A DNA stretch of 64,000 nucleotides, taken from assembly GCA_965235115.1 (NCBI GenBank), contig OZ249437.1, forward strand, positions 34,038,001 to 34,102,000. The letters run 5' to 3'. The position numbers and the translations under genes were made by a program. The stretch's first letter is position 1, and each line of letters opens with the position of its first letter. This document shows positions 23,049 to 62,157 of the stretch, in pieces. The stretch comes from Laetmonice hystrix. Its lineage: Eukaryota. A model generated the notes under the pieces. The model was not told where the DNA came from. It saw only the letters and a list, made by a program, of their open reading frames with translations, and ran no database searches.

Positions 23049-23236
23049 ATGGCGCCCTTCCCACGGTGTGTGGCGGCTTGTACGACCGTCTTGGCCGCCC
23101 TGCTCGCCGCCACGGGCATCGTCGGGGTCCGCGCAGCTGATACAGCTGGCACCACGCCCCACTTCAAGGAAATTTTCTTAGGACGTTGCTGGGAGTATCA
23201 GCATATAATCAACCCGACTGCATTCACCGAATCAGG
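23049..23236 (+). CDS. ADP-ribosyl cyclase exon 1 (signal peptide + GTT..F.EIFLGRC)
   Basis: ATG 23049, hydrophobic leader, donor GG|gtaagt (phase 2) matches exon 2. Confidence 0.92.
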
Positions 23237-26200: not shown

Positions 26201-29200
26201 CAATACCCTCCGCACCCTGTCTTTGTTATTCCTAAACCCTTCCGTGCATTTCCGCACGTTCCGGACACCAAAAAGTTTCCGCGTCGAAATTTTGGTCGAG
26301 AGCAAAATTTGGACGCGGAAATGTACGTCCGCGCACCTTCGGCACCTTGTCCGCTCTGTCGTCCCGACATCGTCAGGACATCCACACATTCCGGAAACCT
26401 TCGGCACCTTCCGCGTGTTGTCCCGGAAGCTTCCGCACCGCGGACAGTGTTCCGAAACATCGCGAAAGGTCCCGAAGCATTGGGGACAACATAGCGACAT
26501 GACGCGGAACATAATAAGGAAACGCCCGGAAGCCGCGCGGAACATGACGAAGCCGTGTGGAAGCTGTGCCGAAGGTGTCCGGGAAGCGCGGTGCCGATGC
26601 CGAACTATATAACACAACGCGGAACATGCGCGGACATTGTGGATCAGACAGCGAAAGTGATAGATTAAGCATCTGGATAGTTTGAACAGCACAATGCCAA
26701 AAGAAAAACTATCGAAGAAGGGAGGCCAGCTTGCGAAGAAGGGGTGTTCCAATCGATTTAGTTGTGCATCTCTCGCAGCTTGGAGATGAAGTAGTCCTGT
26801 AAGCTGAAGTACAGCCGGTGTGACTTCCATGATGGCTCTCAGACATATGAAAAACACCCGTGATCGCCGCGCAATATAGAGCCTTCCAGTATTTCCGCGT
26901 TTTGTCCGCAAAGTTTGTCATTGTCTGCAAGCCTTCCCCTTTGTCCTTTGCACAGACCTGTCCTGGGGCGATCTACGCGCTGTCCGCATTGTCCCGATAT
27001 GATCGGCGGGTCCCCGCATAAATCCGCGCGGTTTCCGATTGTGTCCTTGGACACTCTTAGGACTGTCCACGGACATTCCTAGTCATGACCGCGGAATCGA
27101 TGTTCCATGCACTTTTCGGCGCTCGACGCGGAATGTGTGCCGAAATGGCCATTTTTGCTTCCGCAACCCTTCCGGACCTTGTCCGCGCCCTCGTGGACGC
27201 CAGGCTTAAGTAGCAAAGTGCGAACCAAAGTGTTTATTATAGTCAGCCTCTTGACTATATGGGTGCAAAAAGTGCACTATTGGCTAAAATGTGGACCGTA
27301 CTTTATTATAGAGGCTATATCTTGATAGGGTTTAGGAATACTCATTCTGTTCTCACTACATTCCAAAAGGAAAATGTGCAACTTTCAGAAATTATGTATA
27401 TTTACTTATCGAAATTAGAAAAAATTGTACCCTTTTTAAAAATTTCTACCCGTACTTTATTACAAGTACTCAGTCAAGCAATACATAATATTTAGGCTAT
27501 GAAAGATCAATCAATAACCTATTCTCACACGAATTTCTACTTTGAAATTAAGTTAATTTCATGATCAGTCAGCTTTAAACAGATCCAGCAGGACGTGAGT
27601 AATACTTTTTGTTGTTGTTGTATACTAAAATAAAGAAATGGGGAACACACACCATTTTGTCCGGATTGTATCGATTATTGGCGTCTATTTGCGATGCAAA
27701 ATAAAGTAAAGATCCAGGTTATATACTTTGGAGGAAATGTGGAATATATATATTTTATACTGAATTGCCTTACTCACGTCATGCAGCGAATTAAGGGATG
27801 TACCACAAAATTTACTTACAATAAAAATATCATAAAATGTGGGTATATTCGCCTATAGTTGTTCACTATTGAACCCAAGATCATCAATGCTACTAGTTCT
27901 CCTGGCCTGTAAAGGCCCCATCTTAAAAAAAACATGACGTGCATCAGGAGAGGGACGTGAGTAATTGCTGTGGACATAATTTTGCCCTTTTCAACGTGAT
28001 ATCTGAAGAAGCAGGCCCACGACCTTGAAGTACGTCATGGCACACTAACGAGGTAGGTTGTGTGAAAGTTGTTCCCTATTTCTTTGAGTAGATCAAGGGC
28101 ACCATGCTTAAACTGAAAAAGAGGATGTGTTTTTATGGTCAAGTAATATCCACAGACACTCCCGGACACTACTCCTGGGATAGAATATGGGTACATGTAT
28201 AGTCTGGGCTGAAAGATGAATTCATAATAGTCGAGTTGCCGCCCAACTGGACCTGGAAATCCTGTTAAGTACAAGGTTTTATGATTGAAATGTGTTCCCA
28301 TGGGCCCTAGGAATATTTTGAACTTTGTTGGCAATGAAACAACTTTGGGGAAAATTTTTAATTAGCTAATTAGCATAATTAGCCTGAATTAGTTTAATGA
28401 AAAATAACTTTTGAACCAGGAGGCATAGAATCATAAACGAGGGGGCACATGAGCGATTTTATGCGTATCTTCTAGTTGAGAAGTGCCCGGCGGTCAGGGC
28501 TCTTACCTTCTCTAATAAGAGGCATGACGTGCGTAATATATACCATAGAAATACGTCTATGATATGACTTAGGACATGACAAATCAGTTCTCATGATCTA
28601 CATCTATGATTCTTTGTGGAGGATTTCCCACGGTCACAAACTTCTTCATCTTGCCGTTGAACCTCGACTTTCCTCTGTGTTAATTGCCAACCATTTTGGA
28701 AGAAAATGGTTTTGGAGCTCCTGAATATTACTATCATGTCTGTGTTCTTTTTATTCATATTTTCTCGGTAAATCTGGTTTCCGTTGTTTAGGATATGCAT
28801 GCGTTTTCTAATTTATTTCATCTGTATTTATGACAAGATAAGACCTTTCCAACATTATTCACGTCCTGCATAACCTAAAATCCTCTAAAATAATGTAACC
28901 AATAAGAATATATCTCCCATTAAGCTGAAATTTAGTATGGAGATGTACTTTTTATACATCTATCCATATCCCCCCAAAACTGAAACATCCTGAAAACTTT
29001 ATTTTTTAAACACCCCCCCTTATTGTAAGTGCATTTTATAAGCTTTCTAATGGAGATACAAAGTCTTGGATGAACAATAATTTCTTGTTGCTTTATCTTG
29101 TAGGAAAAGATGGTGCTTACAAATGCAGAAATTCAGAGACGGGAACGCCGAACGCCAAAAGGCGAAGTTGGGCGAGTCAGGGTATCACCGAATGAGTGCT

Positions 29201-32200
29201 GCTCGCATGCTTCATTGGCACACATGAAGTGCTATTATCAATAATAAAGTGGATTTGATGAAATACTACATAAACTTTCGTGTCTTTGTTTCATTTCCAT
29301 GGAGTAAAATAATGAGTTATTAAAAAATATCCCTAGGATAATGACGCGAGTAATATGACGTGAGTAATATTTATAGTAGTGTATGTGTATGTAGTGTAAT
29401 GAAACACCAGCATTTACCTCAGGGCAATAAATGACACAATTACATTGTATGAATGAAGTAATTAACGTGTAACTGCCCGATGTGTGACGCAACTGGTTCT
29501 GCTTGTGTGTTCAACACCTCGCACGTTTACAAACGTTGGGACTCCAAACATCGTAATGTTACGCAATAGGCCGCGGTGTGCAACATTCGGCTCTGATGAA
29601 CACACAAGAAGGTCAAAGTAAGAACCAGCGGCGTCATACATCGGGCGGTTACACGTTAATTACTTCATTGTGACAACGTAATTGTGGCATTTATTGCCCT
29701 AAGTTAAATGCTGGTGTTTCATTTGGTCTATGAAACCTTATTTGCCGTGGGTGTTTACCCTGCCTTTAAAAACACACTTTGATGAAATAAAGGCCCTGCA
29801 ATGGATGTTAAGGAGTAATATGTTGAGAGTAGTTGTTACAAAGGCAAGTAAGAGGGAAATGGTTATATTTACAACATGTCGGAAATAATTAGAGGAAAAA
29901 AGACACGAAGATCTTTTATCAAGTAAAATATTGCTCATTTTTACACGAATATGTAATATTGTGAAGTTTAAAAAGATCGGTAATTTTAATCAGATTTGAA
30001 TAATTTTTGGGATATCGAGAGGTCGTAAGTCCAAGTACGCATCCTTCAAGAATAGGGGGTATAATGTTATATCGGGTGGATAAAAAAAAACGCCCCGAAC
30101 TTTAAACTCCAATATTTCAAAAAGTATTGATTGTAATTCAATGAAATATTTCTTACTATCACTTCATGATGTTGTCTCTTAGTTGTTAATGTTACAACTC
30201 AATAGCTTGGATAGTATTTCCGTAGCGCTAAAAACAAAAATCATTGTACAAAAGCGCAATGCCGGGCTAAAGCGAGTGGTAGTCGCACCAGAGTCCCTGG
30301 CCTCACACTAGAGTAGGTGGTCAATCGGTCCCCCGTGTTCACTTCATACTGCTCTCAGTCTCTTTTTACATGCGCCAATGCACTTCCTGATCTCTGATAG
30401 GGAATTATCTTCCCATTATTAGGAAATAAGCAGCGTTCTGAACGTGTTGCTAAACGTGATAATGATATGATTTCCCTTAAACTTCTGGTTACAGTCATAT
30501 CGTCCTAATGTTGCAGTTTCTCTGTAGGGTTTGGCAAATTAAACATCTGGGTTTCTCTAGAAGTACTAGGAATAGCACATAATTTATTATATCTAGTGGT
30601 TCACAACATTATACATATTGTAAACCATGCAAAAACTAAATATTGAAAACTTCTTTACCCAAGGTACAATGCGGTGCATCAAATAAGTGTCAAATTGGAC
30701 ACCTGGCAGCTGCATGATATTTGACCTAATTCCGGCATTGTGTTTTTAGACACTGATTTTTCTTTTTAGCGCCACGGGATTAATATCAAAGCTATTGAGC
30801 TGAAACTTTAACATACAAGAGATAATATCACGAAGTTATATTAAGAGAAATTTTATTAAATTATAATGGATAGTTGTTGAGATATTAACGTTTAAAGTTC
30901 GGGGCGTTTTTTTTTATCCACCCGATATATAACTGGAAAGGGGTAGAATGTCTTGGGGATGGTTAAAAATATTACTCACGTCATGCAAAAAAACATGCCT
31001 TCACCAGAAGTTGCACAAAAACTGAACCGCTGTGAATTTTACAGTATTGGTGTTTGCAGAAAGCTTGGGACGAATACTCTCGAATAAAAATCTACACCGC
31101 TTAAGCAACTTTTAATTTTCACCATTACCAGGGGGCCCGGTGGCCCAATAGTGCACTTTTTGGCGAAATGACCCATATGTATTAATGTGGTTATTATATA
31201 TTGCAACTTTGAATCTATCAAGGGCGTCAGCAGTCGAACAGACGGTTGAAGGTCGGAGTATGTAGTTTAAATTTGAGCAGGGCATTCATTTCGAAGTGCC
31301 AACGAACGAATTAAATTTCTTCAGCCGAGTTGGTGACATCGTTGCCTGGATGTTCTGGTTACCTCACGCTCGTGTAGCAGTAAACAATGTTTAATATTTT
31401 TGTTTTACCATGTTGTCTGTTGGTTGAAAGTCATGTCGACCATAAAAACACACACTTGAATAGGGAGTTTATCCGATGGCTGGTGGCAATATACGTCATA
31501 ATTATTGTCAAAAACACGGTCAGCCGTCCTTTACTATTATGAGTGACAGTGACTCCATGCCCCTTCTCAAGTGGTGTCCTAGTCTGCTGGTGCTACGAGG
31601 GCGCGTATGTCATGGATGTAGGTTACTCGTTCCCTGTAGTCCGTTGGTGTTACGAGGGCGCATCATGGATGTAAATCACGATTTGTTCGCACCGCTGGTA
31701 ACCGAGGGCGTATCGTGGATGTAGGTCAGTGTTTCCCGGTCTGTTGGTTTACCGAGGGCTTATCTTGGATGTAGGTCAGTGTTTCCCGGTCTGTTGGTTT
31801 ACCGAGGGCTTATCTTGGATGTAGGTCAGTTTTTCCCGGTCTGTTGGTTTACCGAGGGTTTATCTTGGATGTAGGTCAGTGTTTCCCGGTCTGTTGGTTT
31901 ACCGAGGACTTATCGTGGATGTAGGTCAGTGTTTCCCGGTCTGTTGGTTTACCGAGGACTTATCTTGGATGTAGGTCAGTGTTTCCCTGTCTGTTGGTTT
32001 ACCGAGTGCTTATCGTGGATGTAGGTCAGTGTTTCCCGGTCTGTTGGTTTACCGAGGACTTATCTTGGATGTAGGTCAGTGTTTCCCGGTCTGTTGGTTT
32101 ACCGAGGGCTTATCTTGGATGTAGGTCAGTGTTTCCTGGTCTGTTGGTTTACCGAGGGCGTATCTTGGATGTAGGTCAGTCTTTTCCCGATCCGCTGGTT

Positions 32201-35200
32201 TACGAGAGCGTATCTTGGATGTAGGTCAGTCTTTTCCCGATCCGCTGGTTTTACGAGGGCGTATCTTGGATGTAGGTCAGTCTTTTCCCGGTCCGCTGGT
32301 TTTACGAGGGCGTATCTTGGATGTAGGTCAGTCTTTTCCCGGTCCGCTGGTTTTACGAGGGCGTATCTTGGATGTAGGTCAGTCTTTTCCCGATCCGCTG
32401 GTTTACGAGGGCGTATCTTGGATGTAGGTCAGTCTTTTCCCGATCCGCTGGTTTTACGAGGGCGTATCTTGGATGTAGGTCAGTCTTTTCCCGATCCGCT
32501 GGTTTTACGAGGGCGTATCTTGGATGTAGGTCAGTCTTTTCCCGGTCCGCTGGTTTTACGAGGGCGTATCTTGGATGTAGGTCAGTCTTTTCCCGGTCCG
32601 CTGGTTTTACGAGGGCGTATCGTGGATGTAGGTCAGTGTTTCCCGGTCTGTTGGTTTACCGAGGGCTTATCTTGGATGTAGGTCAGTGTTTCCCGGTCTG
32701 TTGGTTTACCGAGGGCTTATCTTGGATGTAGGTCAGTCTTTTCCCGATCCGCTGGTTTACGAGGGCGTATCTTGGATGTAGGTCAGTCTTTTCCCGGTCC
32801 GCTGGTTTTACGAGGGCGTATCTTGGATGTAGGTCAGTCTTTTTCCGGTCCGCTGGTTTTACGAGGGCGTATCTTGGATGTAGGTCAGTCTTTTTCCGGT
32901 CCGCTGGTTTTACGAGGGCGTATCTTGGATGTAGGTCAGTCTTTTGTCGGTCCGATGGTTTTACGAGGGCGTATCTTGGATGTAGGTCAGTCTTTTGTCG
33001 GTCCGATGGTTTTACGAGGGCTTATCTTGGATGTAGGTCAGTCTTTTTCCGGTCCGCTGGTTACACGAGGATCTATCTTGGATGTAGGTCAGTCTTTTTC
33101 CGGTCCGCTGGTTACACGAGGATCTATCTTGGATGTAGGTCAGTCTTTTCCCGGTCCGCTGGGTTTACGAGTGTCTATATTGAATGTACAGACAAAGCTG
33201 GGCTTTTAATCTGGACTGTACATGCAACGAACGTTATATGTATAAGATCACCTGTCCTCCGTATTCTTGTTAAAAAATTAGGCATAAAAGTTTGGTTCTG
33301 ATGTGCTGTTCACCTGAGACAGAGTTAGATAACGTCATCTTTAATTGATGTTCTCAATCATAGGTGGGCCTCTATATGTCTTAGAAAGGAATTCATAATC
33401 TGACATTAATTACCTTTTAATTATGTCTTAACCCTGTTTTTGTTATGTGTTATCACCTGTCATATTACCATCGCTTCCATCAATGTAACGCCGCGGCCGC
33501 GTACTTAGAATGGGCCGGTTCTATATAGTGGCCATTTCTGTTACTAAAATAGCCTTTACCCTTCTTTCTGCCGACTCCTTTCAGGCATCAAACCCAGGTT
33601 TATACCGATATATACATGCAGTAATTGTACACCCTTACATATATCGATGTATTACGGGTAATATAAAGAATGTAGGTACGGATATAACTGGGGTTTGTGG
33701 AATGGCAGGCACGTGGCTGAGACAGGACAGGTATGTTCGTGGGCATCAGCAGCTTCGTAAAAGAAAGTGTTGAGCCGTCCCATATGTTCTGCACAAATAG
33801 ACCCACCCCCACGTGTTGCTCAAGTTGAGCCAACATGTGGCATCAGTCAGATTCCTCACTATATGGAAGGCTTTTTCTTCCTATATTTTCAATTAAAATC
33901 TATGTACATTAATATTTGTGATTGCGTTTTCGGTTCGGATACGTGGGCAAGACGAAATCGGACCTTTTTTCAAATTTCATTGTAACGGAGTATTTAGTGT
34001 GATACGCGTACTGTCCATGCAGTGTGATGTTTATGTGTAACTAGGCCCTATACATTTATAAGGTTCCTTTATATTCACGCACATACACCCAACCAGTCAA
34101 AAATAAGTGAAGATAATGATACTCAAAACAAAAAGTAGGCATGCAAATATAAACACAGGATAGGATGTGCAAACATTATACTAAAGTGTATACGAACCAG
34201 TGGCCGGTCGTACCACTGGGCGATGCTAAATCTAGCAACGCACGCCTGGTATGCCTAGTTGAGTCTCATACCATCGAAACTATGCACAGCCGCCCCAGCA
34301 CGTAAGATTATAAACACTTGCGCCGTTCACTTGACGATATATATCCCAGTCGCTCCGTTGTAAGCAAACTATTGGCACATCTCCATTACCACTAGGGCTT
34401 CCATCACTGTATAACTGGCTCCCACAGCGGTATCACCCACACAGACGTATACGCGGGGGGTAGGCCTAGAGACGCTACCAAAACACGACCGTCCAATCGC
34501 CCTGCTTCTAGACTACCTCACTCCTCTTGTCTCTCTGCCTCTCCACTACTTCATCCCAATGGCCTACGAAAACGTCGACACAGTTCCAATCGACCACCGA
34601 CCTGAAAACACGTCCGCACTTTCCAGCAAATACGAATACTGCCAACAGATCCCCGTTCCCGGCTCGCAGAATCATGACACGGAATTTCCAGTAATGATCC
34701 TGAATGATTCCTATTCTGGCCGGTGTGAGCCGGTGCAAATGTAACCAAATTAGACGAAGCCCTCGCAGCAGACCGTTGTCGTAGTACGAGGGCTGACCAT
34801 TCACTATAGGCCCTATACGACGAACGCTCCCTACGGATTGTGGCTCTCCTAAAAAGGAAGCAATTCCTCGTTTCTCAAGATTGCCTTACGCCATGGTCGA
34901 CCACCACGGCTAAAAGGTCCCACAATGAGGCTCGGAGCACTGACTCTGGTGCTTTTTGCGCTATTCCGACGTGTTTGAATGCACCATTACTTTAATGTGT
35001 CCCATCCCTTGAGGGGTACTGAACAACACGGCAATTGGGCATCGGTTGAAGACTGGTGGACCACTAGGTAACGATGTGTGGGGAGCGACCAGGCGAACAT
35101 CTCAGGCACCTAATACTAGTCGATCGCCCTGCGCTCAAACAGCCTCGAGAAAGATAAAATGCTACCCCCGAGGTTATCCATGTGTTACTGATCTGTTTAG

Positions 35201-50200: not shown

Positions 50201-53200
50201 AGTTTTATCAGGGCATAAGGGTCCTGTAAAGTCTAGCGGCGCCATGGAGTGTACTGTTTCGTGGAGGGATCTGATGACTTCGTTATAGGTTGCAAAGGGG
50301 GTATACCCATTACCCTTTATGACGCAATAGAAAGAGAGCGTCCAATGAATAGGCTCAGCTTTAGGTTAGGTATTCGTTTAACGTGATACTCAAGACTATT
50401 TCCACCACCTTTCTGACGTGAAGGTCTGCATGCCACTGATGTTTAGCTTCAGTTTCGTTCGGCTCCAGATCAGCGTTGGCATCGGTCCCCAGGGGGATCT
50501 GCCCCTTTCTGTCGGCCTATTCACAACGCATGACGTGCATGTCACACCACAGGCCTACTGCAACTTCTGCTGCCATCACATGATCGGCTAATTTACTTGT
50601 ACCTCAAACTTCCCTTTTCTGCTTCTTCCCCACACCCCACCCCCACCCCAATTTTAGAAATTAAACAATATAAGAGAGTAATGCGATTTGGTTTTGATGG
50701 CTTCATTTAACTGGCCTGTAGCCAGGGGGACAAGGGGGCCTGTGCCCCACCCAAAATCTGGCAAGGTCCAAAAGGTCCAACTTTTGCCAAATTTTAAATG
50801 GACTTTTGGTCCTGAAAATTATTTTGGACAAGATGTCAGCAAAACTGTGGTTGGTTCACTCTTATCTTGAACGAAATCAATATTGCCCGCATCAAAATTG
50901 TTTGGGGTGCAAGTGCAGATAACTTTGCTGGTTATGCAACTGCTCTGTAAAGGCCTAAGAGTTTATTCTGGCCTTCAGACAGTGTGTTAAGCTTAGGTTG
51001 TCACAATGGTACAGCTTTGAACAGGGAATCTTTGTGGTGAAGGCATTCAATGAAACCAGAAGTTTGCAAGCCACACAGGATGTGGTTGCAGACTGGTTTC
51101 TTGCTGTCCTCGGCCTTCCTGAGTGTCCTCTGTTGTGGTTGAGGCTGGTTTCCTCGGATCTTGCTGTCCTCAACCTTCCCGAGTGTCCTCTGTTAGGCTG
51201 GTTTCCTTGGATCTTGCTGTCCTCGGCCTTCCTTAGTGTCCTCTGTTGTGGTTGAGGCTGGTTTCCTGGGATCTTGCTGTCCTCGACCTTCCTGAGTGTC
51301 CTCTGTTGTGGTTGAGGCTGGTTTCCTGGGATCTTGCTGTCCTCGGCCTTCTCGAGTGTCCTCTGTTGTGGTTGAGGCTGGCTTCCTCGGATCTTGCTGT
51401 CCTCGGCCTTCCCGAGTGTCCTCTGTTGTGGTTGAGGCTGGTTTCCTGGGATCTTGCTGTCCTCGGCCTTCCCGAGTGTCTTCTGTTGTGGTTGAGGCTG
51501 GTTTCCTGGGATCTTGCTGTCCTCGGCCTTCCCGAGTGTCCTCTGTTGTGGTTGAGGCTGGTTTCCTGGGATCTTGCTGTCCTCGGCCTTCCCGAGTGTC
51601 CTCTGTTGTGGTTGAGGCTGGTTTCCTGGGATCTTGCTGTCCTCGGCCTTCCCGAGTGTCCTCTGTTGTGGTTGAGGCTGGTTTCCTGGGATCTTGCTGT
51701 CCTCGGCCTTCCCGAGTGTCCTCTGTTAGGCTGGTTTCCTCGGATGTTGCTGTCCTCGGCCTTCCCGAGTGTCCTCTGTTAGGCTGGTTTCCTCGGATGT
51801 TGCTGTCCTCGGCCTTCCCGAGTGTCCTCTGTTGTGGTTGAGGCTGGTTTCCTGGGATCTTGCTGTCCTCGGCCTTCCCGAGTGTCCTCTGTTAGGCTGG
51901 TTTCCTCGGATGTTGCTGTCCTCGGCCTTCCCGAGTGTCCTCTGTTAGGCTGGTTTCCTCGGATGTTGCTGTCCTCGGCCTTCCCGAGTGTCCTCTGTTG
52001 TGGTTGAGGCTGGTTTCCTGGGATCTTGCTGTCCTCGGCCTTCCCGAGTGTCCTCTGTTGTGGTTGAGGCTGCTTCCGTGTGCTTCATACTTTTTACATT
52101 GACCCAGATTGTTTTCTGTGATGGTGGTTCTTACGTATGTAGAGCAACTGGCTCCTGTATACTTTTGTTTAGACGATAAGTCCGATGTCCATCGTGTCTG
52201 TACAGGCTCATATAAACAGGTACGGTGGGATCAGGTATTATTGTTTATTATTATGAGTAGTAAAGGAAATGCTATAATAAATAAATCTCAATCTTGTTTA
52301 CGTCCTTTCTAATTACAAATGTAATGTCTTTGAGCTCACGTTGGATGTACGAGTATACAATGGTGCGTGGTCGATTACCAGTGCCGTTTCGTAGAGAGCT
52401 GGGATCAGCACAGATCATCAAACTCACTACTTAAAAGTTGCTCACGCGGGCGTAGCTTCGTGTTGCCGTTCGAGGGCCAATTGATCGATATTCGATTAGC
52501 GTCGCGGAGAACGACTCACCCTTGTAAGAGTAAAATCACCCTAATGGCTGTAATGTATTTGATTCCTATAGCTTCAATGACGTAAAGAAATATAGCTTCA
52601 TAAAGCGTCATTTAAGAAGGCCAATGACTTATTGAAGCCACACGACATTTTTTACAGCTGTAAACTAAATGGCTTGAATAATTGCGATAAGACTGTTATG
52701 CAGGAGGCTGCTTGGATGCGTGACACTTGAAAGGCCCTAAATAGGCTCGTCCTGTGTTGAAACAATGGCTACGGATAATTTAGTAACCACATTAAGTCCA
52801 ATTAGGCGCCAGTTGAACCTCTTCTTACAACCAAGATTTATGTTAACCTGTCATTATCTAATGGCAACATGCTGCCAACGAAACGGTTCAAGTCGAGCTT
52901 ATTCTCCGAAATGTAAAACGATTACGTATTCTCAATTTCAAACCGGCAAATCCACTGGACCCAGTTTAAGCTTAAAGCCAGGAATCCATGTGTACGTAGT
53001 GTGGACGTGATCCGTTATGCGTTATGCGTACTGCGCAGTGCGAAATGCAATGAAAACAAGTTGGGGTGATTCCATGTAGGCCTATGCGTAGTGGGCAATG
53101 CGTGTTTCCATTGTTTTGATTACGCACTACGCAATAGGCACTACGGACACATGGATACCTGACTTAACGCTTTTGATTGGTCGGTCTGCTTACACCAGCC

Positions 53201-56200: not shown

Positions 56201-59200
56201 AAACATTCTTTGGTATGCCGACCTTCTCAACAAATCAGGGCCTCTATACAACCACCAGGACCCGCTCTGAGGTCTTTACGTTAAAATACCAATGTATATT
56301 TTGAATGGAAATCTTAACGCAAAATCCTCCCAGGCAACCCAGCTAACACACAGTGCCGCAAGATAAACATTTTGTACGGCTAACATTTCCGAAACGTTTA
56401 CCAATCCTTTTTTTATTTGCCGCGGTCGATCTGAATCCACGCGGCTTCTTTCATGATTCCTGTCCATCTGCAGCTACCCGGCCATCCTCTTTTTTGCCTG
56501 TCCTGACCTGACATCAAGATCATTTTATTTTGCAGGAAGAAAAACTGTACGAAGCTCTATATGCTATTTGAGGCGGCCTTTTCCAATCGGTTTCCGTGCG
56601 ATGTACCAGTGAATCGTTTCGACGATTTTGTTATAGCAGCGTCTCATCCCGTAGAGGCCAATAAGGTGCGGAATTCAGTCTTCTCTTCTTACCTATTATA
56701 TTTTAATTTATATTATAATTTGCATTTAGTTGCGAAGGTCTAATACTATTCGCATCATAAAGGTAGCTATTTCCTGTTTGAATCAAAGGGAGGGGGTATA
56801 TACCCCACAATTGTTAAATATTATGATTTAACTTGATATTTTTTATCGCACTACACGGGTAGCTGAGTTTAAAAGAATGATCCTTTTTTTCTTTCCAGTC
56901 TTTATTTTGGGAAGGAGTGTACGAGCTTGTTCACATGTACAGTTACCATGGTAAAAGGTTTACGACAATTTCTGACACTCTTTCAGGTGAGTTGAGTTAA
57001 GTTATATAAATAAATATGCATACTATGTGTGCTTCTTCGTATTTTGATCCTTCTATAAGCTTTGAAAACATGAGTGACCCTAAAATTCTGGTTGAGAAAT
57101 TCGGATATGACACTGCCACGCCCGAACCAATCTAAACGACGCGTTCGTGATAATATTATAGCCATAGCACACAATAAACAAAAGCATATTATTGTTCAAA
57201 CGATACTCATTTGGTTGCTAGTTTTATGTTTTACTCTATTATTAAGAGCCAGATATTTAGTTTTATTTCTTTGTTAAAGCAGAATTATGGGAATCACGTC
57301 ATTACAGTCATCACGAATGCATTATACAAAGCGATCATTAATCGGCACATTCGATTCATATATTTGAGAAACAAGCCAGCCCATTTAAATTTCAAGGTCA
57401 TAGAGTGGCCAAGTCGCTTTCTGTTCTGTGAAATCAACTGCGGCTCGGGCCTCGTGTTCAGCAGTTCTTGCCTTGCTTTTAACGAAAACTGCTGACACAG
57501 AGATCAGAGATGGTAAGACTTAATACTAACTCTGCTGACACATAGATCAGAGATGGTAAGACTTAATACTAACTCTGCTGACACATAGATCAGAGATGGT
57601 AAGACTTAATACTAACTCTACTGACACATAGATCAGAGATGGTAAGACTTAATACTAACTCTGCTGACACATAGATCAGAGATGGTAAGACTTAATACTA
57701 ACTCTACTGACACATAGATCAGAGATGGTAAGACTTAATACTAACTCTGCTGACACATAGATCAGAGATGGTAAGACTTAATACTAACTCTGCTGACACA
57801 TAGATCAGAGATGGTAAGACTTAATACTAACTCTACTGACGCATAGATCAGAGATGGTAAGACTTAATACTAACTGCTGACACATAGATCAGAGATGGTA
57901 AGACTTAATACTAACTCTGCTGACACATAGATCAGAGATGGTAAGACTTAATACTAACTCTACTGACGCATAGATTAGAGATGGTAAGACTTAATATTAA
58001 CTCTGCTGACACATAAATCAGAGATGGTAACTCTACTGACGCATAGAACAGAGATAGTAAGACTTAATACTAACTCTGCTGACACATGGATCAGAGATGG
58101 TAAGACTTAATACTAACTCTACTGTCGCATAGATCAGAGATGGTAAAACTTAATACTAACTCTGCTGACACATAGATCAGAGATGGTAAGACTTAATACT
58201 AACTCTACTGACGCATAGATCAGAGATGGTAAGACTTAATACTAACTCTACTGACGCATAGATCAGAGATGGTAAGACTTAATACTAACTGCTGACACAT
58301 AGATCAGAGATGGTAAGACTTAATACTAACTCTGCTGACACATAGATCAGAGATGGTAAGACTTAATACTAACTCTGCTGACACATAGATCAGAGATGGT
58401 AAGACTTAATACTAACTCTACTGACGCATAGATCAGAGATGGTAAGACTTAATACTAACTCTACTGACGCATAGATCAGAGATGGTAAGACTTAATACTA
58501 ACTCTACTGACGCATAGATCAGAGATGGTAAGACTTAATACTAACTCTGCTGATACATAGATCAGAGATGGTAAGACTTAATACTAACTCTGCTGACACA
58601 TAGATCAGAGATGGTAAGACTTAATACTAACTCTACTGACGCATAGATCAGAGATGGTAAGACTTAATACTAACTCTACTGACGCATAGATCAGAGATGG
58701 TAAAACTTAATACTAACTCTGCTGACACATAGATCAGAGATGGTAAGACTTAATACTAACTCTACTGACGCATAGATCAGAGATGGTAAGACTTAATACT
58801 AACTCTACTGACGCATAGATCAGAGATGGTAAGACTTAATACTAACTGCTGACACATAGATCAGAGATGGTAAGACTTAATACTAACTCTGCTGACACAT
58901 AGATCAGAGATGGTAAGACTTAATACTAACTCTACTGATGCATAGATCAGAGATGGTAAGACTTAATACTAACTCTACTGACACATAGATCAGAGATGGT
59001 AAGACTTAATACTAACTCTACTGACGCATAGATCAGAGATGGTAAGACTTAATACTAACTCTGCTGATACATAGATCAGAGATGGTAAGACTTAATACTA
59101 ACTCTGCTGACACATAGATCAGAGATGGTAAGACTTAATACTAACTCTGCTGACACATAGATCAGAGATGGTAAGACTTAATACTAACTCGACTCGCATC

Positions 59201-62157
59201 ATTCTAATCTGGTCGACCCATTACCCTGTAGGCCTACTCACAGTGGTAGCCAAGCACATTCCTGATAATCCTTCATTTCCAGCTCTGCTCCAGGGTAGGG
59301 ATTTAACCTTGGAGATTATCGGATACTAATGAACGCCAAGTTGGTTCGACTTTAATTAAGAGAATCAATAGAAACGTGCGTGGCTGAGATAATAATAGTT
59401 CAAAAAACCCACCCGTCCATTATTCCTCAACGATTGCATCTTGCTGTGTTTTCGCAGGATATTTGGCCAACAAATTACAGTGGTGTGGCAAGGCCTCGGG
59501 TGGAATCGACGAGGAGGTATGCCCAGACTACGGCTCGTGTAAGGAAGAAGTTTCCAGATCTTTCTGGAGGTCAGCATCCAGACAGGTAAGGAACACTGAT
59601 ATGATGGCAATCCCATTTCTATAGTTGTGTTGGTGTCGTCTGTAGATGCTCGGAAATGAATGTGGTGTCAAGTTCTCTTGAAAGACGATCTGATCGACTC
59701 ATTGGATTTTGCTGACCTGTTTATGCAGGGCAATAGGCCATACTCCTCCGTTTGGCTAATGATGGAAAAAACTCAATAAAAGGTATTAAGCCACGGCCGT
59801 CGTTCATGAAAAGTCATGCCCCCTTCCATATTCCGGCCCGATGCCCCCTAGTGATATAAATATGCCAATGATCAATTTTGACCAATATTGTAGCCAGCAG
59901 GCCTATAAGTTTAGCCTTGGAGACAGTCTGGCCGGTTCTAGACAATATCTGCTGCCCCTGCAGTATTGTCACCTCGACAATGCTTGCTTCCAAACTAGTC
60001 GTGCGGCCTGTGTCATGTAAAAGTCGTCACTTTTGGTGTCATACAATTCTATTAGCCTTCCTCGTCTTCTGACTTGTAATTGACGAGCTGTGTCGCCGTT
60101 CAGTGAATAATGTGCTTGCTCCTAACCCTCGTAAGCCGTCCACTCTAGATAACGACTATATCGACCGTGTTAAATAAATGGACTTGGATTTGTGCTGAGA
60201 GATAAGTGGTAACTAATTATGGGGGCAGGCCATCACAAAACGAGGGGGGATCAATTTCCTCCGTTCTGAGACAAGCCTTAATGGAGGAACTATCTCAGTA
60301 TGATCCGTTTATCAGTTTCGACCTCCTATAAGTGTAATAATAGTCCTATTGATGCAAACATTGCTTTAGATATGATGATCATGATGATTCCGAAATATGG
60401 GTCACAATACCTCAAAATGGTTGCTATGTGTAGAGTCTAGATCTTATGTATTAGTTTTTAGATGAATAGTGTAATGACTAGGCGTTCGCCATACAAATAA
60501 TATCATTAGTATGGAAATAGAAGTGTATACGTCATGATAATAATTCCAACATTTCAGTTCAGGACTGTTCTTTTTAAACCAACAGTACGCCAAGATGGCT
60601 CAGGGAACAGTATACGTGATGTTCAACGGAACAAGGAAGCATGCTTATAACCCAACCAGGTACGTGCCCTCCTACTTTGTAATCGGGTACCACTAGAGCA
60701 GACGTTTGTGACGTAATCAAACTAGACGTAGCCAGGTTAATTCACATCGGTATTGAAATTAGGTACAGCCCCCCAATATAGGGCCGAGGAGTCAGTATAG
60801 CCACAATCAGGTACGCTTCCTAATAACATTATGGCAATCAGTCGCGCAGGATGACAGGATAAGACGCTAACGTCGACATTCCTTCTGCCCTGTTAGATTA
60901 GAAAATTACATTATGCACGGAACACCAAAGGATATCTGATGGTCCTTGTGTTATTCTTATACCAAGAATCTGATTAACCATTATACACAGTGCAAGTATG
61001 AGAACATATATCCTGTAGTCTGCCTGAAAAATACGTCTTGCTTTCAGCGTGTTTTCCCAATACGAGCTGGTCAACATCAATAGTAGCAGAGTCTCCCTAT
61101 TTAACGCCATGCTTATTCATGACATTGGCATGCAAGCAAGGTGAGTCACAATCCAGGTTACAATAAAACATTGGAGGCATTGTACACTCCCCCCTCCTCC
61201 TTGCAAAAAAATATACGGAGGGGGTACATGACACTGCCGTGATATTACTCATTACTCCCATCATGTGGTTCTAACATGACGTTTTGGCTATAAAACTGAT
61301 ACAGGAAAGGCATTCGCTTAAAAAAATTATTATTAAAAGCAATTTGTGAATTCTGAATGTGAATTGTATAATGATGTGTGTGTTACATTGGCTTTTTGTC
61401 ACTGATGAGTTTATCGGTTTATCGGCGGGTTTGTAATTACTATTGTGGTATATGTTGGGGGGGGGGGGGCAGGTCAGTATAATTGAGACTTAAATAAAGT
61501 TAATTTAACTTCATCCTCGCGTTGTCCTCATATCATACGCCCCTGATTGTCGTGCGCACAGTTGGGTAGAAGATTTGTTTCAGGGGGAGGGGGCTAAGAG
61601 TAAGGATAACCATGGGCCAGAGCCCCTGGCCTCGCGCCCCAATACTCCCGTATTTTCCCTTCTGTATTTGTTGATGTGTTCATGTAACCACGCCACCTGG
61701 TGGGTTTCAGCGAACACTGCGGGATGGGCTCACTACTGAGATTACAGCACAAAGTCGAGGACCTCGGCATTGAGTTTCGATGTACAGACGACCCTGCGTA
61801 AGTAGGCAGCTATAGGGTGTTGGGGGCCGGGAGGTGAAAATATAGACAAGGTCAAAGGTTAACCGATCACTGATAATATAAGTAATATATGACTTTAACA
61901 AACACATCAAACACCTGGGACTTTAGTGTTGTTCCTCGAAGAAATATATTCCCGAAATCTTTGTGCATATCCTTGACTTATTTAACGCTTTGAAATTGAA
62001 ATGTCCTTTTCTTTGTAGTTCTGTACGGCATCTCTTATGTGTGGATAATGAGGACGCCTTGGAATGTCAAGGAATAAGCAACGCACTCCGGTCAACATCC
62101 TCAATCATTTTAAATATTCTCGCCATATCAGTGTATCTACTCATGCTTGGGTCCTAG
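23049..62157 (+). CDS. ADP-ribosyl cyclase / cyclic ADP-ribose hydrolase (CD38/BST1 family), join(23049-23236,56536-56665,56899-56986,59458-59585,60586-60659,61048-61140,61711-61797,62019-62157), 927 nt = 308 aa + stop
   Basis: Spliced frame: signal peptide, GTTPHFKEIFLGRCWEY, KNCTKLY..F..AF...PC, SLFWEG, TISDTLSGYLANKLQWCG, CP...C...SFWRSASRQYA, VMFNG, VFSQYELVNI, HCG..SL, FRCTDDP, VRHLLCVD...EC, hydrophobic C-terminus. All 10 family cysteines present and all phases consistent. No exact symbol given because CD38 and BST1 are a vertebrate duplicate pair. Confidence 0.94.
24019..25998. mobile_element. Non-autonomous TIR DNA transposon, about 2 kb
   Basis: 33-bp TIR (24019-24051 / 25966-25998, 3 mismatches); internal cccatgtacggtgac-like motif about 5 times in both orientations; TA or ATAT flanks. 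Confidence 0.8.
26120..27205. mobile_element. GC-rich non-autonomous TIR element, about 1.1 kb (superfamily uncertain, PIF/Harbinger-like style)
   Basis: 23-bp TIR tggcgtccactagggcccggaca / tgtccgcgccctcgtggacgcca (2 mismatches); interior full of TCCGC/GCGGA motifs. Confidence 0.75.
27257..31178. mobile_element. Probable 3.9-kb TIR element hosting a nested mariner derivative
   Basis: atatggg...caaaaagtgcactattgg (27257-27283) inverted to ccaatagtgcactttttg...acccatat (31145-31178); GACGTGAGTAAT-like motif about 7 times inside. Confidence 0.6.
30068..30929 (-). mobile_element. Tc1/mariner deletion derivative, 858 bp plus TA TSDs
   Basis: Perfect 40-bp inverted repeat including TA (30068-30107 / 30890-30929). 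The minus strand at about 30310-30420 reads EIRKCIGACKKRLRAV*SEHGGPIDHLL, a typical Tc1/mariner transposase C-terminus. Confidence 0.88.
31575..33185. repeat. 50/51-bp minisatellite, about 29 good copies plus degenerate flanking units
   Basis: Unit A cttggatgtaggtcagtgtttcccggtctgttggtttaccgagggcttat (50 bp); unit B cttggatgtaggtcagtcttttcccggtccgctggttttacgagggcgtat (51 bp). Confidence 0.97.
40807..41149. mobile_element. Kolobok-like MITE with TTAA TSD
   Basis: TTAA|AGGGGCACA ... TGTGTCCCT|TTAA, 335-bp interior; the TIR is short. Confidence 0.5.
41892..41930 (+). repeat. (GGGGT)n G-rich tract, potential G-quadruplex
   Basis: Six or more G4+ runs separated by single T. Confidence 0.7.
45962..46405. 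mobile_element. MITE, about 440 bp, TTAA- or TA-flanked
   Basis: ttaagctaggctcacactatacaaca / tgttgtatagtgtgatcctagcttaa (1 mismatch); internal direct copy of ctcacactatacaac at about 46317. Confidence 0.85.
49493..49572. repeat. CT-rich low-complexity / imperfect (CT)n tract
   Basis: Nearly pure pyrimidine run. Confidence 0.8.
51006..52170. pseudogene. Rearranged N-terminal fragment of a Tc1/mariner-type (DUF4817-like HTH) transposase
   Basis: Plus strand 51006-51081: MVQL/FEQGIFVVKAFNETRSLQATQD. Minus strand 52125 down: EPPSQKTIWVNVK/KYEAHGSSLNHNRGHSGRPRTARSQE. Both fit consecutive parts of the same HTH family pattern as recalled. Confidence 0.7.
51082..52072. repeat. 60-bp (and 53-bp variant) minisatellite, about 17-18 units, derived from transposase coding sequence
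   Basis: Unit gtggttgaggctggtttcctgggatcttgctgtcctcggccttcccgagtgtcctctgtt; the minus strand reads NRGHSGRPRTARSQETSLNH. Confidence 0.96.
52973..53167. mobile_element. Tourist/PIF-Harbinger-like MITE, 189 bp, TAA TSD
   Basis: TAA|AGCCAGGAATCCATGTGTACGTAGTG ... CACTACGGACACATGGATACCTGACT|TAA. Confidence 0.85.
54347..54692 (+). mobile_element. Decayed tRNA-derived SINE with Deu/Nin-like core
   Basis: A-box-like gtggtgaagtggtcgag, degenerate B-box, core actcttttcgaaaagagtagggg..cccggtg resembling the DeuSINE core as recalled, (tcaa/tcac)-type tail. Confidence 0.5.
56536..56665 (+). CDS. ADP-ribosyl cyclase exon 2 (KKNCTKLYMLFEAAF...PCDV...ANK)
   Basis: ttttgcag acceptor, AAG|gtgcgg donor, 130 nt. 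Confidence 0.93.
56899..56986 (+). CDS. ADP-ribosyl cyclase exon 3 (SLFWEG...TISDTLS)
   Basis: Strong polypyrimidine acceptor, G|gtgagt donor, signature motif region. Confidence 0.93.
57488..59190. repeat. 43-bp minisatellite in cyclase intron 3, about 40 copies
   Basis: Unit ctctgctgacacatagatcagagatggtaagacttaatactaa with ctg/cta and cac/cgc variants and a few 41-bp units. Confidence 0.98.
59458..59585 (+). CDS. ADP-ribosyl cyclase exon 4 (GYLANKLQWCG...CPDYGSC...SFWRSASRQ)
   Basis: ttcgcag acceptor, CAG|gtaagg donor. Confidence 0.94.
60586..60659 (+). CDS. ADP-ribosyl cyclase exon 5 (YAKMAQGTVYVMFNGT...)
   Basis: caacag acceptor, AG|gtacgt donor, 74 nt. Confidence 0.93.
61048..61140 (+). 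CDS. ADP-ribosyl cyclase exon 6 with catalytic glutamate (VFSQYELVNI)
   Basis: ctttcag acceptor, AG|gtgagt donor, 93 nt; E209 aligns with CD38 E226. Confidence 0.93.
61711..61797 (+). CDS. ADP-ribosyl cyclase exon 7 (EHCGMGSL...FRCTDDP)
   Basis: gtttcag acceptor, GC|gtaagt donor, 87 nt. Confidence 0.92.
62019..62157 (+). CDS. ADP-ribosyl cyclase exon 8, last disulfide + predicted GPI-anchor signal
   Basis: SVRHLLCVDNEDALEC, small-residue ISNA, hydrophobic IILNILAISVYLLML, TAG stop. Confidence 0.92.

What the first reader, a model, noticed from the sequence alone, without database searches (positions are those of the whole stretch)
56899..61140. Invertebrate-type cyclase with a BST1/CD157-like, non-canonical active site
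Aligned to human CD38 (numbering from memory), the catalytic E226 (E209), W125 (W110), W189 (W172) and S193 (S176) are kept. The TLEDTL signature is TISDTL (E146 to S131), S126/R127 are E111/G112 (SLFWEG) and D155 is N140. Human BST1 has the same W-E and S-D changes (SLFWEN, PLSDVL) and is also GPI-anchored. E146 substitutions in CD38 are known to shift the hydrolase/cyclase balance. So this enzyme may have BST1-like or altered substrate preference. Either the BST1 state predates vertebrates or it evolved convergently (inference).
Basis: partly seen in the sequence, partly recalled or inferred. Interest (0 to 1): 0.7.

Follow-up and report, generated by a model that had tools for sequence, protein, structure and literature searches.

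The report
Worm ADP-ribosyl cyclase lacking pocket carboxylates
This is a real, complete, single-copy gene for an ADP-ribosyl cyclase (CD38/BST1/Aplysia cyclase family) in an invertebrate. Its catalytic core is intact, but the second active-site glutamate is a serine, as in human BST1; it is an ordinary family member with one interesting, untested active-site variant.

Summary
An 8-exon, 308-residue gene (window 23049-62157, + strand) encodes a Pfam PF02267 ADP-ribosyl cyclase with a signal peptide, ten conserved cysteines and a GPI-signal-like tail. Tool alignments confirm W110, W172, S176 and catalytic E209. They also confirm TISDTL in place of TLEDTL: S131 aligns with Aplysia E98, CD38 E146 and BST1 S98.

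- N140 and G112 are not unusual; they are the Aplysia cyclase states (N107, G79).
- Only S131 and E111 are BST1-like.
- H118, N140, G112 and V204 are not BST1-like.
- A 50%-identical orthologue from another species (P0005, a transcript-like contig) keeps the serine but has Ile where the window has E111.

So the conserved peculiarity is the serine alone. It leaves the nicotinamide pocket with no carboxylate (S131 + N140). CD38 has two, Aplysia and BST1 one each. The position that steers cyclase versus hydrolase activity (Aplysia F174, CD38 T221) is Val here.

The protein is about equally distant from BST1 and Aplysia cyclase (37-39% identity) and further from human CD38 (28-30%). Convergence with BST1 is more likely than shared ancestry, but I could not collect enough invertebrate sequences to settle it. 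No RNA data exist for this species.

The parts
23049..23236 (+). Exon 1: start codon, signal peptide (hydrophobic residues about 8-27) and the start of the cyclase domain with the G-R-C-W-E-Y motif; ends in phase 2 at a gtaagt donor
   Evidence: Pfam PF02267 positions 1-23. It is the only N-terminal match in the genome. It aligns without gaps to P0005 residues 35-60.
56536..56665 (+). Exon 2 (aa 63-106), with Cys67 and Cys84; Ala103 stands where CD38 has the extra Cys119
   Evidence: Pfam profile positions 25-67; splice sites. A T>A variant at 56592 (F82Y) appears in DNA contigs of the same sample.
56899..56986 (+). Exon 3 (aa 107-136), carrying the finding's key residues: W110 (56908-10), E111 (56911-13), G112 (56914-16), H118, and T-I-S131-D-T-L with S131 = TCT at 56971-73
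   Evidence: Aligned to Aplysia 75-101. Pfam profile positions 68-95. No sequence difference in three DNA runs. At 62% identity to P0005 it is the best-conserved exon.
57489..59190 (.). 43-bp minisatellite (about 40 units) inside intron 3; not part of the protein
   Evidence: TRF and sequence. The scan noted it earlier as s1-310987.
59458..59585 (+). Exon 4 (aa 136-178): N140 (59469-71), W-C145-G, C157, C163, W172 (59565-67), S176 (59577-79)
   Evidence: Aligned to Aplysia 104-144, E 1.6e-7. Pfam profile positions 98-140, 35 bits.
60586..60659 (+). Exon 5 (aa 179-203), with V-M-F-N-G-T in place of the usual V-M-L-N-G-S
   Evidence: Pfam profile positions 141-163.
61048..61140 (+). Exon 6 (aa 203-234): V204 (61049-51, the Aplysia F174 / CD38 T221 position), F205, and the catalytic E209 (61064-66)
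   Evidence: Pfam profile positions 166-194. Aligned through P0005 to BST1 F173-F174-A-D-Y-E178.
61711..61797 (+). Exon 7 (aa 234-263), with Cys237 and Cys258
   Evidence: Pfam profile positions 197-223. 57% identical to P0005.
62019..62157 (+). Exon 8 (aa 263-308 plus the TAG stop): Cys270, Cys279, a run rich in small residues, then a 17-residue hydrophobic end with nothing after it (GPI-attachment-signal-like)
   Evidence: hydropathy. Aligned to the P0005 C-terminus.

Best explanation
The locus is a functional, single-copy ADP-ribosyl cyclase / NAD(P)+ glycohydrolase gene of the CD38/BST1/Aplysia cyclase family. Shown: eight exons in the family's usual count, a full-length Pfam domain, all ten family cysteines, both substrate-positioning tryptophans (W110, W172), S176 and the catalytic Glu (E209). 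Inferred from sequence: a cleaved signal peptide, up to four N-glycosylation sequons (N66, N105, N192, N214), five disulfides and a C-terminal GPI signal. That would make it a cell-surface or lumenal ecto-enzyme, like BST1, the Schistosoma enzyme and some sea-urchin cyclases. Inferred mechanism: as in the solved relatives, E209 supports cleavage of the nicotinamide-ribose bond of NAD(P)+. The ADP-ribosyl intermediate is then cyclised, hydrolysed or captured by another base. The distinctive point is the nicotinamide-binding triad. In Aplysia it is E98-N107-W140 and in CD38 it is E146-D155-W189. Here it is S131-N140-W172, with no carboxylate. The same holds in a 50%-identical orthologue from another species, so this is a stable lineage trait and not an error or decay. 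The residue that steers cyclisation versus hydrolysis (Aplysia F174, CD38 T221) is Val204. My prediction is an active but probably modest enzyme whose product ratio cannot be read from sequence. Its base-exchange reaction with nicotinic acid should be less dependent on acid pH than in CD38. The resemblance to BST1 at S131 and E111 is most likely convergent.
For: - Gene model: all sites are AG/GT and the open 927-nt frame is intact.
- Family: PF02267 hits on seven of eight exons in colinear order.
- Copy number: this is the only such locus in the 627-Mb assembly, by the Pfam model and by a family profile.
- Residue mapping to Aplysia cyclase and to BST1 through P0005.
- Residue equivalences Aplysia E98/N107/W140/F174 = CD38 E146/D155/W189/T221, and their roles (PMC2785692).
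- In bovine CD38 the signature Glu hydrogen-bonds the Trp, a His and nicotinamide (PMC3329556).
- P0005 is 50% identical over 302 columns with almost no gaps across all exon junctions. All ten Cys are aligned, and the T-I-S-D-T motif uses the same TCT serine codon.
- P0005 is not encoded in this genome, so it comes from another species.
- P0005 scores 260 bits on PF02267. Its AlphaFold model (pLDDT 87) superposes on BST1 and Aplysia cyclase at TM 0.88-0.90 by target.
- BST1, which also has Ser at this position, is an active though weak enzyme (PMC3329556, PMC5698419, PMC8604996).
- E146 and D155 are proposed to impose the acid-pH dependence of NAADP synthesis (Graeff 2006, as cited in PMC5555186).
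- Exon 3 is confirmed at base level in three DNA runs.
Against: - There are no transcript data for this species, so expression and splicing are unproven.
- The GPI anchor and signal peptide rest on hydropathy and pattern only.
- The 3-D model is of the orthologue, not of the window protein, and I could not read side-chain geometry from it.
- The loss of the signature Glu together with Val at the F174 position could mean very low activity, or a mainly non-enzymatic role.
- I have no biochemical data on any Ser/Asn enzyme.
- The exon 5 motif reads M-F-N-G-T where relatives have M-L-N-G-S.
Confidence: 0.72

Rival explanations
1. The BST1-like state is ancestral. Ser at the signature position (with Glu after the first Trp) was present in the bilaterian ancestor, was kept by BST1 and this lineage, and Glu arose or was regained in CD38 and Aplysia.
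For: P0005's best sequence hit among solved structures is human BST1, at 194 bits against 190 for Aplysia and 140 for CD38. The nearest language-model clusters are chordate 'cyclase 2' (BST1) clusters. The GPI-type C-terminus and the 10-Cys pattern are shared with BST1.
Against: The score gap between BST1 and Aplysia is trivial. Glu is found in Aplysia, in an invertebrate-type metagenomic fragment that also has W-S-G and Asn (L010), and in every CD38-like sequence retrieved. BST1 and CD38 are vertebrate tandem duplicates (PMC6368836, PMC5698419), so an ancestral Ser needs more changes. P0005 lacks the Glu after Trp. Four other site residues differ from BST1.
Confidence: 0.15
2. The protein is mainly a non-enzymatic surface receptor or adhesion molecule, as has been argued for CD157, with residual or no catalysis.
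For: It has lost the signature Glu. CD157, with the same Ser, is 'a far less powerful catalyst' and has receptor functions (PMC5698419). The tail is GPI-like.
Against: The catalytic Glu, both Trp, the Ser four residues after the second Trp, the His and all disulfide cysteines are conserved across 50% sequence divergence. That pattern is expected for a working active site.
Confidence: 0.12
3. Exon 3 as read is not what the mRNA uses (mis-predicted or alternative exon, or a decaying gene), so the Ser is an annotation artefact.
For: No RNA data exist for this species. A 1.7-kb minisatellite full of splice-site look-alikes lies in the next intron.
Against: Exon 3 has canonical sites and the correct phase. 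It is the best-conserved exon against a transcript-like contig of another species, which carries the same T-I-S-D-T. No second exon-3-like sequence exists in the genome. There are no stops or frameshifts in any exon, and the DNA sequence is confirmed.
Confidence: 0.03

Closest known systems
Human BST1/CD157 (PDB 1isf; Swiss-Prot Q10588)
   Same: Same fold and Pfam family. The orthologue P0005 is 38-39% identical to it. Both have Ser at the signature position (BST1 S98), Glu after the first Trp (BST1 E78), ten cysteines without the CD38-specific extra pair, and a signal peptide with a GPI-type C-terminus.
   Different: BST1 has D107 (here N140), N79 (here G112), N85 (here H118) and F173 (here V204). 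BST1 is a vertebrate tandem duplicate of CD38. The orthologue P0005 has Ile, not Glu, after the Trp.
Aplysia californica ADP-ribosyl cyclase (PDB 1lbe, 1r12, 3zwm; P29241)
   Same: 37% identity to P0005. Same 8-exon count as reported for A. kurodai (PMC6368836), ten cysteines, W-x-G after the first Trp, Asn at the CD38 D155 position, a His eight residues after the first Trp, and the F-x-x-Y-E catalytic motif.
   Different: Aplysia has E98 (here S131), S78 (here E111) and F174 (here V204). From my own knowledge, not tested here, Aplysia cyclase is a soluble granule protein; the window protein has a GPI-signal-like tail.
Human CD38 (PDB 1yh3 and others; P28907)
   Same: Same family; catalytic Glu, both Trp, S193 and H133 equivalents, and exon count.
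   Different: Only 28-30% identity. CD38 is a type II membrane protein with an extra disulfide (C119-C201), E146, D155, S126-R127 and T221.
P0005, an unnamed 306-aa protein on a 1313-nt Logan contig of run ERR14707600
   Same: 50% identical and colinear over the full length. Same T-I-S-D-T motif, Asn, Val-Phe before the catalytic Glu, ten Cys and a hydrophobic C-terminus. It is the presumed orthologue in another species.
   Different: It has W-I-G where the window has W-E-G. Its organism is not known to me.

Membership tests
ADP-ribosyl cyclase / CD38 family (Pfam PF02267 Rib_hydrolayse) | Sequence match to the family model over the whole domain | tested here: met
   Seven exons match profile positions 1-223 in order, with the best single exon at 35 bits (cut-off 25). 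The orthologue P0005 scores 260.7 bits over positions 1-241. The spliced window protein could not be submitted as one sequence.
ADP-ribosyl cyclase / CD38 family (Pfam PF02267 Rib_hydrolayse) | Catalytic glutamate (CD38 E226 / Aplysia E179 / BST1 E178) | tested here: met
   E209 sits in S-V-F-S-Q-Y-E-L and aligns through P0005 to BST1 E178.
ADP-ribosyl cyclase / CD38 family (Pfam PF02267 Rib_hydrolayse) | Two substrate-positioning tryptophans (CD38 W125, W189) | tested here: met
   W110 aligns with Aplysia W77 and W172 with Aplysia W140.
ADP-ribosyl cyclase / CD38 family (Pfam PF02267 Rib_hydrolayse) | Ten conserved cysteines (five disulfides) | tested here: met
   Cys47, 67, 84, 145, 157, 163, 237, 258, 270 and 279 all align with P0005. 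P0005's ten align with BST1's. Disulfide formation itself is not testable here.
ADP-ribosyl cyclase / CD38 family (Pfam PF02267 Rib_hydrolayse) | T-L-E-D-T-L signature motif | tested here: not met
   The motif reads T-I-S-D-T-L. The motif is not universal in the family: BST1 reads P-L-S-D-V-L.
ADP-ribosyl cyclase / CD38 family (Pfam PF02267 Rib_hydrolayse) | Enzymatic activity on NAD(P)+ | not testable with these tools
   This needs recombinant protein.
BST1/CD157 orthologue group | Ser at the signature position and Glu after the first Trp | tested here: met
   S131 and E111 against BST1 S98 and E78. P0005 has only the Ser.
BST1/CD157 orthologue group | Other BST1 active-site states (N79, N85, D107, F173) | tested here: not met
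   The window has G112, H118, N140 and V204.
BST1/CD157 orthologue group | Specific phylogenetic grouping with vertebrate BST1 rather than with other cyclases | tested here: inconclusive
   P0005 scores 194 bits against BST1 and 190 against Aplysia, with 37-39% identity to both. No tree could be built, because BST1 and invertebrate sequences were not retrievable as session sequences.
BST1/CD157 orthologue group | GPI anchoring | tested here: inconclusive
   The C-terminal 17-residue hydrophobic end is preceded by small residues and has no cytoplasmic tail. This is a pattern only, with no predictor and no experiment.
Aplysia-type dedicated cyclase | E98-N107-W140 triad plus F174, which directs cyclisation | tested here: not met
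   N140 and W172 are present, but E98 is Ser and F174 is Val (roles from PMC2785692).

The most novel reading that the evidence does not exclude
This worm lineage has an ADP-ribosyl cyclase whose nicotinamide pocket carries no carboxylate at either of the two positions (CD38 E146 and D155) proposed to repel nicotinate at neutral pH. It could therefore make NAADP by base exchange at physiological pH. That would be a natural answer to the long-standing puzzle that the known enzymes need acid pH for this reaction.
Probability: 0.1. Interest if true: 0.6.

Novelty: new member of a known kind. Interest (0 to 1): 0.3.

Why it matters
ADP-ribosyl cyclases make the calcium messengers cADPR and NAADP and consume NAD. 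Which product dominates is set by a handful of active-site residues that have been studied mostly by mutagenesis of CD38 and Aplysia cyclase. This gene and its orthologue are natural enzymes that combine Ser, Asn and Val at three of those positions. None of the solved relatives compared here shows that combination. Expressing the protein would test, on a natural background, the proposed roles of the two acidic pocket residues in pH dependence and of the F174/T221 position in cyclisation. As a genome feature it is otherwise an ordinary, well-conserved family member.

Tried and rejected
- All three word-indexed homologue searches returned only P0005 and vertebrate CD38-like proteins.
- The exhaustive representative search could only take a single 42-aa exon, because the spliced protein has no reference. 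It gave 6 hits.
- Two metagenome scans with degenerate patterns from exons 3 and 4 found no relative.
- In the ENA contig behind P0004 (L009/L011) I found exons 4, 6, 7 and 8 of another invertebrate cyclase gene. Its exon 3 was not found within 18.6 kb upstream by tblastn or motif search, so its signature residue stays unknown.
- No RNA run holds this locus. The three holders are DNA of one sample, so read laying could only confirm the DNA sequence.
- Exon 6 alone gave no PDB hit.
- AlphaFold DB cluster hits list invertebrate family members, but organisms are blanked and no residue-level data are given.
- The papers on sea-urchin SpARC4, Schistosoma NACE H103W and Graeff 2009 are not held. The sea-urchin SpARC1-3 paper states only that the Glu and two Trp are conserved and does not give the signature residue. 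I therefore could not verify my recollection that SpARC4 has its own non-canonical active site.
- The BST1 nicotinamide-riboside paper has no residue-level discussion.
- The organism was not identified. Earlier notes of this scan call it a (marine) worm; I did not test that.
Full report
**What is there**

The exons are:
- 23049-23236
- 56536-56665
- 56899-56986
- 59458-59585
- 60586-60659
- 61048-61140
- 61711-61797
- 62019-62157, with a TAG stop at 62155-57

Every intron is GT..AG, the phases fit, and the spliced frame is 927 nt, or 308 residues. Intron 1 is 33 kb.

Seven of the eight exons hit Pfam PF02267 (ADP-ribosyl cyclase) one after another along profile positions 1-223. In the whole 627-Mb assembly, both the Pfam model and a family profile find only this locus, so the gene looks single-copy. 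Eight exons is the count reported for Aplysia kurodai cyclase and vertebrate CD38 (PMC6368836).

The protein starts with a hydrophobic signal-peptide-like segment and has four N-x-S/T sequons. It has ten cysteines after the signal peptide. It ends in a 17-residue hydrophobic stretch preceded by small residues, with nothing after it, which is the look of a GPI-attachment signal. That last point is inferred from the pattern only.

**Check of the observation**

| Window residue(s) | Aligned to | Source |
|---|---|---|
| W110-E111-G112 | Aplysia W77-S78-G79 | exon 3 vs PDB 1lbe, |
| T-I-S131-D-T-L | Aplysia T96-L-E98-D-T-L101 | |
| N140 | Aplysia N107 | exon 4, |
| W172 | Aplysia W140 | |
| S176 | Aplysia S144 | |
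| E209 | BST1 E178, via P0005 | |

Exon 6 is too short and divergent to hit the PDB alone. The orthologue P0005 (below) aligns without gaps to the window protein. In its alignment to human BST1, the Y-E-L glutamate falls on BST1 E178.

Counting residues in that printed alignment gives BST1 S74-L-F-W77-E78-N79 and P96-L-S98-D-V-L101.

The equivalences Aplysia E98/N107/W140/F174 = CD38 E146/D155/W189/T221 are stated in PMC2785692.

Contigs from three DNA runs of the same sample cover exons 2-3. They differ from the window only in introns and at 56592 in exon 2 (F82Y), and nowhere in exon 3. The S131 codon is TCT, so no single base change gives Glu.

**A second species**

A search of 1.8 billion representative proteins with exon 4 found P0005. 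It is a 306-residue protein on a 1313-nt intronless (transcript-like) Logan contig.
- It is 50% identical to the window protein over 302 aligned columns.
- Only small gaps occur, and none lies at the exon 3-8 junctions.
- All ten cysteines are in register.
- It has the same T-I-S-D-T, also with TCT for the Ser.

It is not encoded in this genome, so it comes from another species. This supports the exon model by homology. It also shows the serine is a conserved lineage trait and neither an error nor decay. P0005 has W-I-G where the window has W-E-G, so the Glu after the Trp is not conserved with the Ser.

**Active-site comparison**

CD38 numbers come, the motif numbers and fixed spacing; CD38 S126, R127 and F222 rest on my own knowledge of the human sequence.

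| Human CD38 | Aplysia | Human BST1 | Window | P0005 |
|---|---|---|---|---|
| W125 | W77 | W77 | W110 | W105 |
| S126 | S78 | E78 | E111 | I106 |
| R127 | G79 | N79 | G112 | G107 |
| H133 | H85 | N85 | H118 | H113 |
| E146 | E98 | S98 | S131 | S126 |
| D147 | D99 | D99 | D132 | D127 |
| D155 | N107 | D107 | N140 | N135 |
| W189 | W140 | W140 | W172 | W167 |
| S193 | S144 | S144 | S176 | S171 |
| T221 | F174 | F173 | V204 | V199 |
| F222 | F175 | F174 | F205 | F200 |
| E226 | E179 | E178 | E209 | E204 |

Three conclusions follow.
- The window matches BST1 at two positions (S131, E111) and differs from it at four (G112, H118, N140, V204).
- The nicotinamide pocket has two carboxylates in CD38, one in Aplysia and one in BST1, and none in the window protein or P0005.

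Mutagenesis shows this position steers cyclisation versus hydrolysis: Aplysia F174G gains NADase activity, and CD38's Thr disfavours cyclisation (PMC2785692). Snake NADases have Ile there (PMC6368836).

**Overall kinship**

| Measure for P0005 | BST1 | Aplysia cyclase | CD38 |
|---|---|---|---|
| phmmer score against solved chains (bits) | 194 | 190 | about 140 |
| Identity in PDB fold search (%) | 39 | 37-38 | 28-32 |
| Identity in Swiss-Prot models (%) | 34-38 | 35-37 | 28-36 |

The AlphaFold model of P0005 has mean pLDDT 87. A language-model look-up puts P0005 nearest to chordate 'cyclase 2' clusters, which is only a lead. So the protein is equidistant from BST1 and the mollusc enzyme and further from human CD38. 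That fits BST1 having kept more of the ancestral form, and it does not indicate a special relationship.

**How it most likely works**

By homology, E209 assists cleavage of the nicotinamide-ribose bond. W110 and W172 position the ribose and nicotinamide. The intermediate is then cyclised, hydrolysed or base-exchanged.

In bovine CD38 the signature Glu hydrogen-bonds the first Trp, the His and the nicotinamide amide, and later holds the attacking water (PMC3329556). In Aplysia, E98 and N107 bind nicotinamide. Replacing E146 in CD38 raised cyclase activity up to 9-fold (Graeff 2001, cited).

A Ser can still hydrogen-bond but is shorter and uncharged. The small Val at the 204 position should weaken the adenine-folding contact. 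These two effects pull in opposite directions, so the cyclase-to-hydrolase ratio cannot be predicted from sequence.

BST1, which has the same Ser, is active but weak. It also handles nicotinamide riboside (PMC8604996).

E146 and D155 are proposed to repel nicotinate at neutral pH, and so to make NAADP synthesis acid-dependent (Graeff 2006, cited in PMC5555186). A pocket without either carboxylate predicts weaker pH dependence. This is my inference and is untested.

**Ancestral or convergent**

I could not assemble the needed sequence set (see Tried and rejected). The data points are:
- Glu in Aplysia.
- Glu in a metagenomic invertebrate-type fragment that also has W-S-G and Asn (L010).
- Glu in every CD38-like protein retrieved.
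- Ser in vertebrate BST1 and in the two related invertebrate proteins.

BST1 and CD38 are vertebrate tandem duplicates. Parsimony therefore favours two independent Glu-to-Ser changes. I give this about 60% against 15% for an ancestral Ser, with the rest undecided.

**Limits**

- There is no RNA evidence for this species.
- There is no direct structure or whole-protein search for the window protein. The spliced sequence has no reference, so exons and the orthologue stood in for it.
- The organism was not identified. Earlier notes of this scan call it a marine worm, and I did not check that.
- My recollection that sea-urchin SpARC4 and Schistosoma NACE have their own non-canonical active sites could not be verified, because those papers are not held.

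**Verdict**

This is a new member of a known family, with a conserved and uncharacterised combination of known active-site variants. Its interest is modest.

Noticed in passing
window 57489-59190: A 43-bp minisatellite of about 40 units lies in intron 3 of the cyclase gene. Each unit contains cag-AGATG-gtaaga, which looks like an acceptor, a 5-nt micro-exon and a donor. The scan has already noted it (s1-310987).
   Followed up: partly
window 56592: Contigs from all three DNA runs of the same sample read A instead of T. This changes codon 82 from TTT to TAT (F82Y) in exon 2, probably the other haplotype. The other eight differences in the 1.1-kb stretch are intronic.
   Followed up: partly
L009 9806-10258 (ENA ERZ25069859 contig): This is another invertebrate cyclase gene. 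The start of its exon 4 (the C-G-S-L-T-D...C-P-D-W-G-S-C segment) is partly repeated in tandem three times upstream of the full exon. That is the same splice-junction minisatellite habit noted across the window's genome. Its catalytic Glu is kept, and its exon 3 was not found within 18.6 kb upstream.
   Followed up: partly
P0001 (Discoglossus pictus, 534 aa): A frog protein has two CD38-like domains in tandem behind one N-terminal membrane anchor. Domain 1 has T-L-E-D-T-F. Domain 2 has A-V-A-N-T-F (signature Glu to Ala, Asp to Asn) but keeps the catalytic Glu.
   Followed up: no
window 13599-14168 (+) and 26132-26911 (-): A BSD-domain ORF (Pfam E 3.5e-14) lies upstream of the cyclase gene. Inside the 33-kb first intron, a minus-strand ORF gives a weak, sub-threshold LITAF-like zinc-ribbon hit.
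   Followed up: no
window 31639-33171 and 51099-52072: Two more large minisatellites lie inside intron 1: 51-bp units x 30 and 60-bp units x 17. An ORF across the second gives a Pfam DUF3399 hit (E 1.3e-9). The scan noted that second array separately (s1-311020).
   Followed up: no
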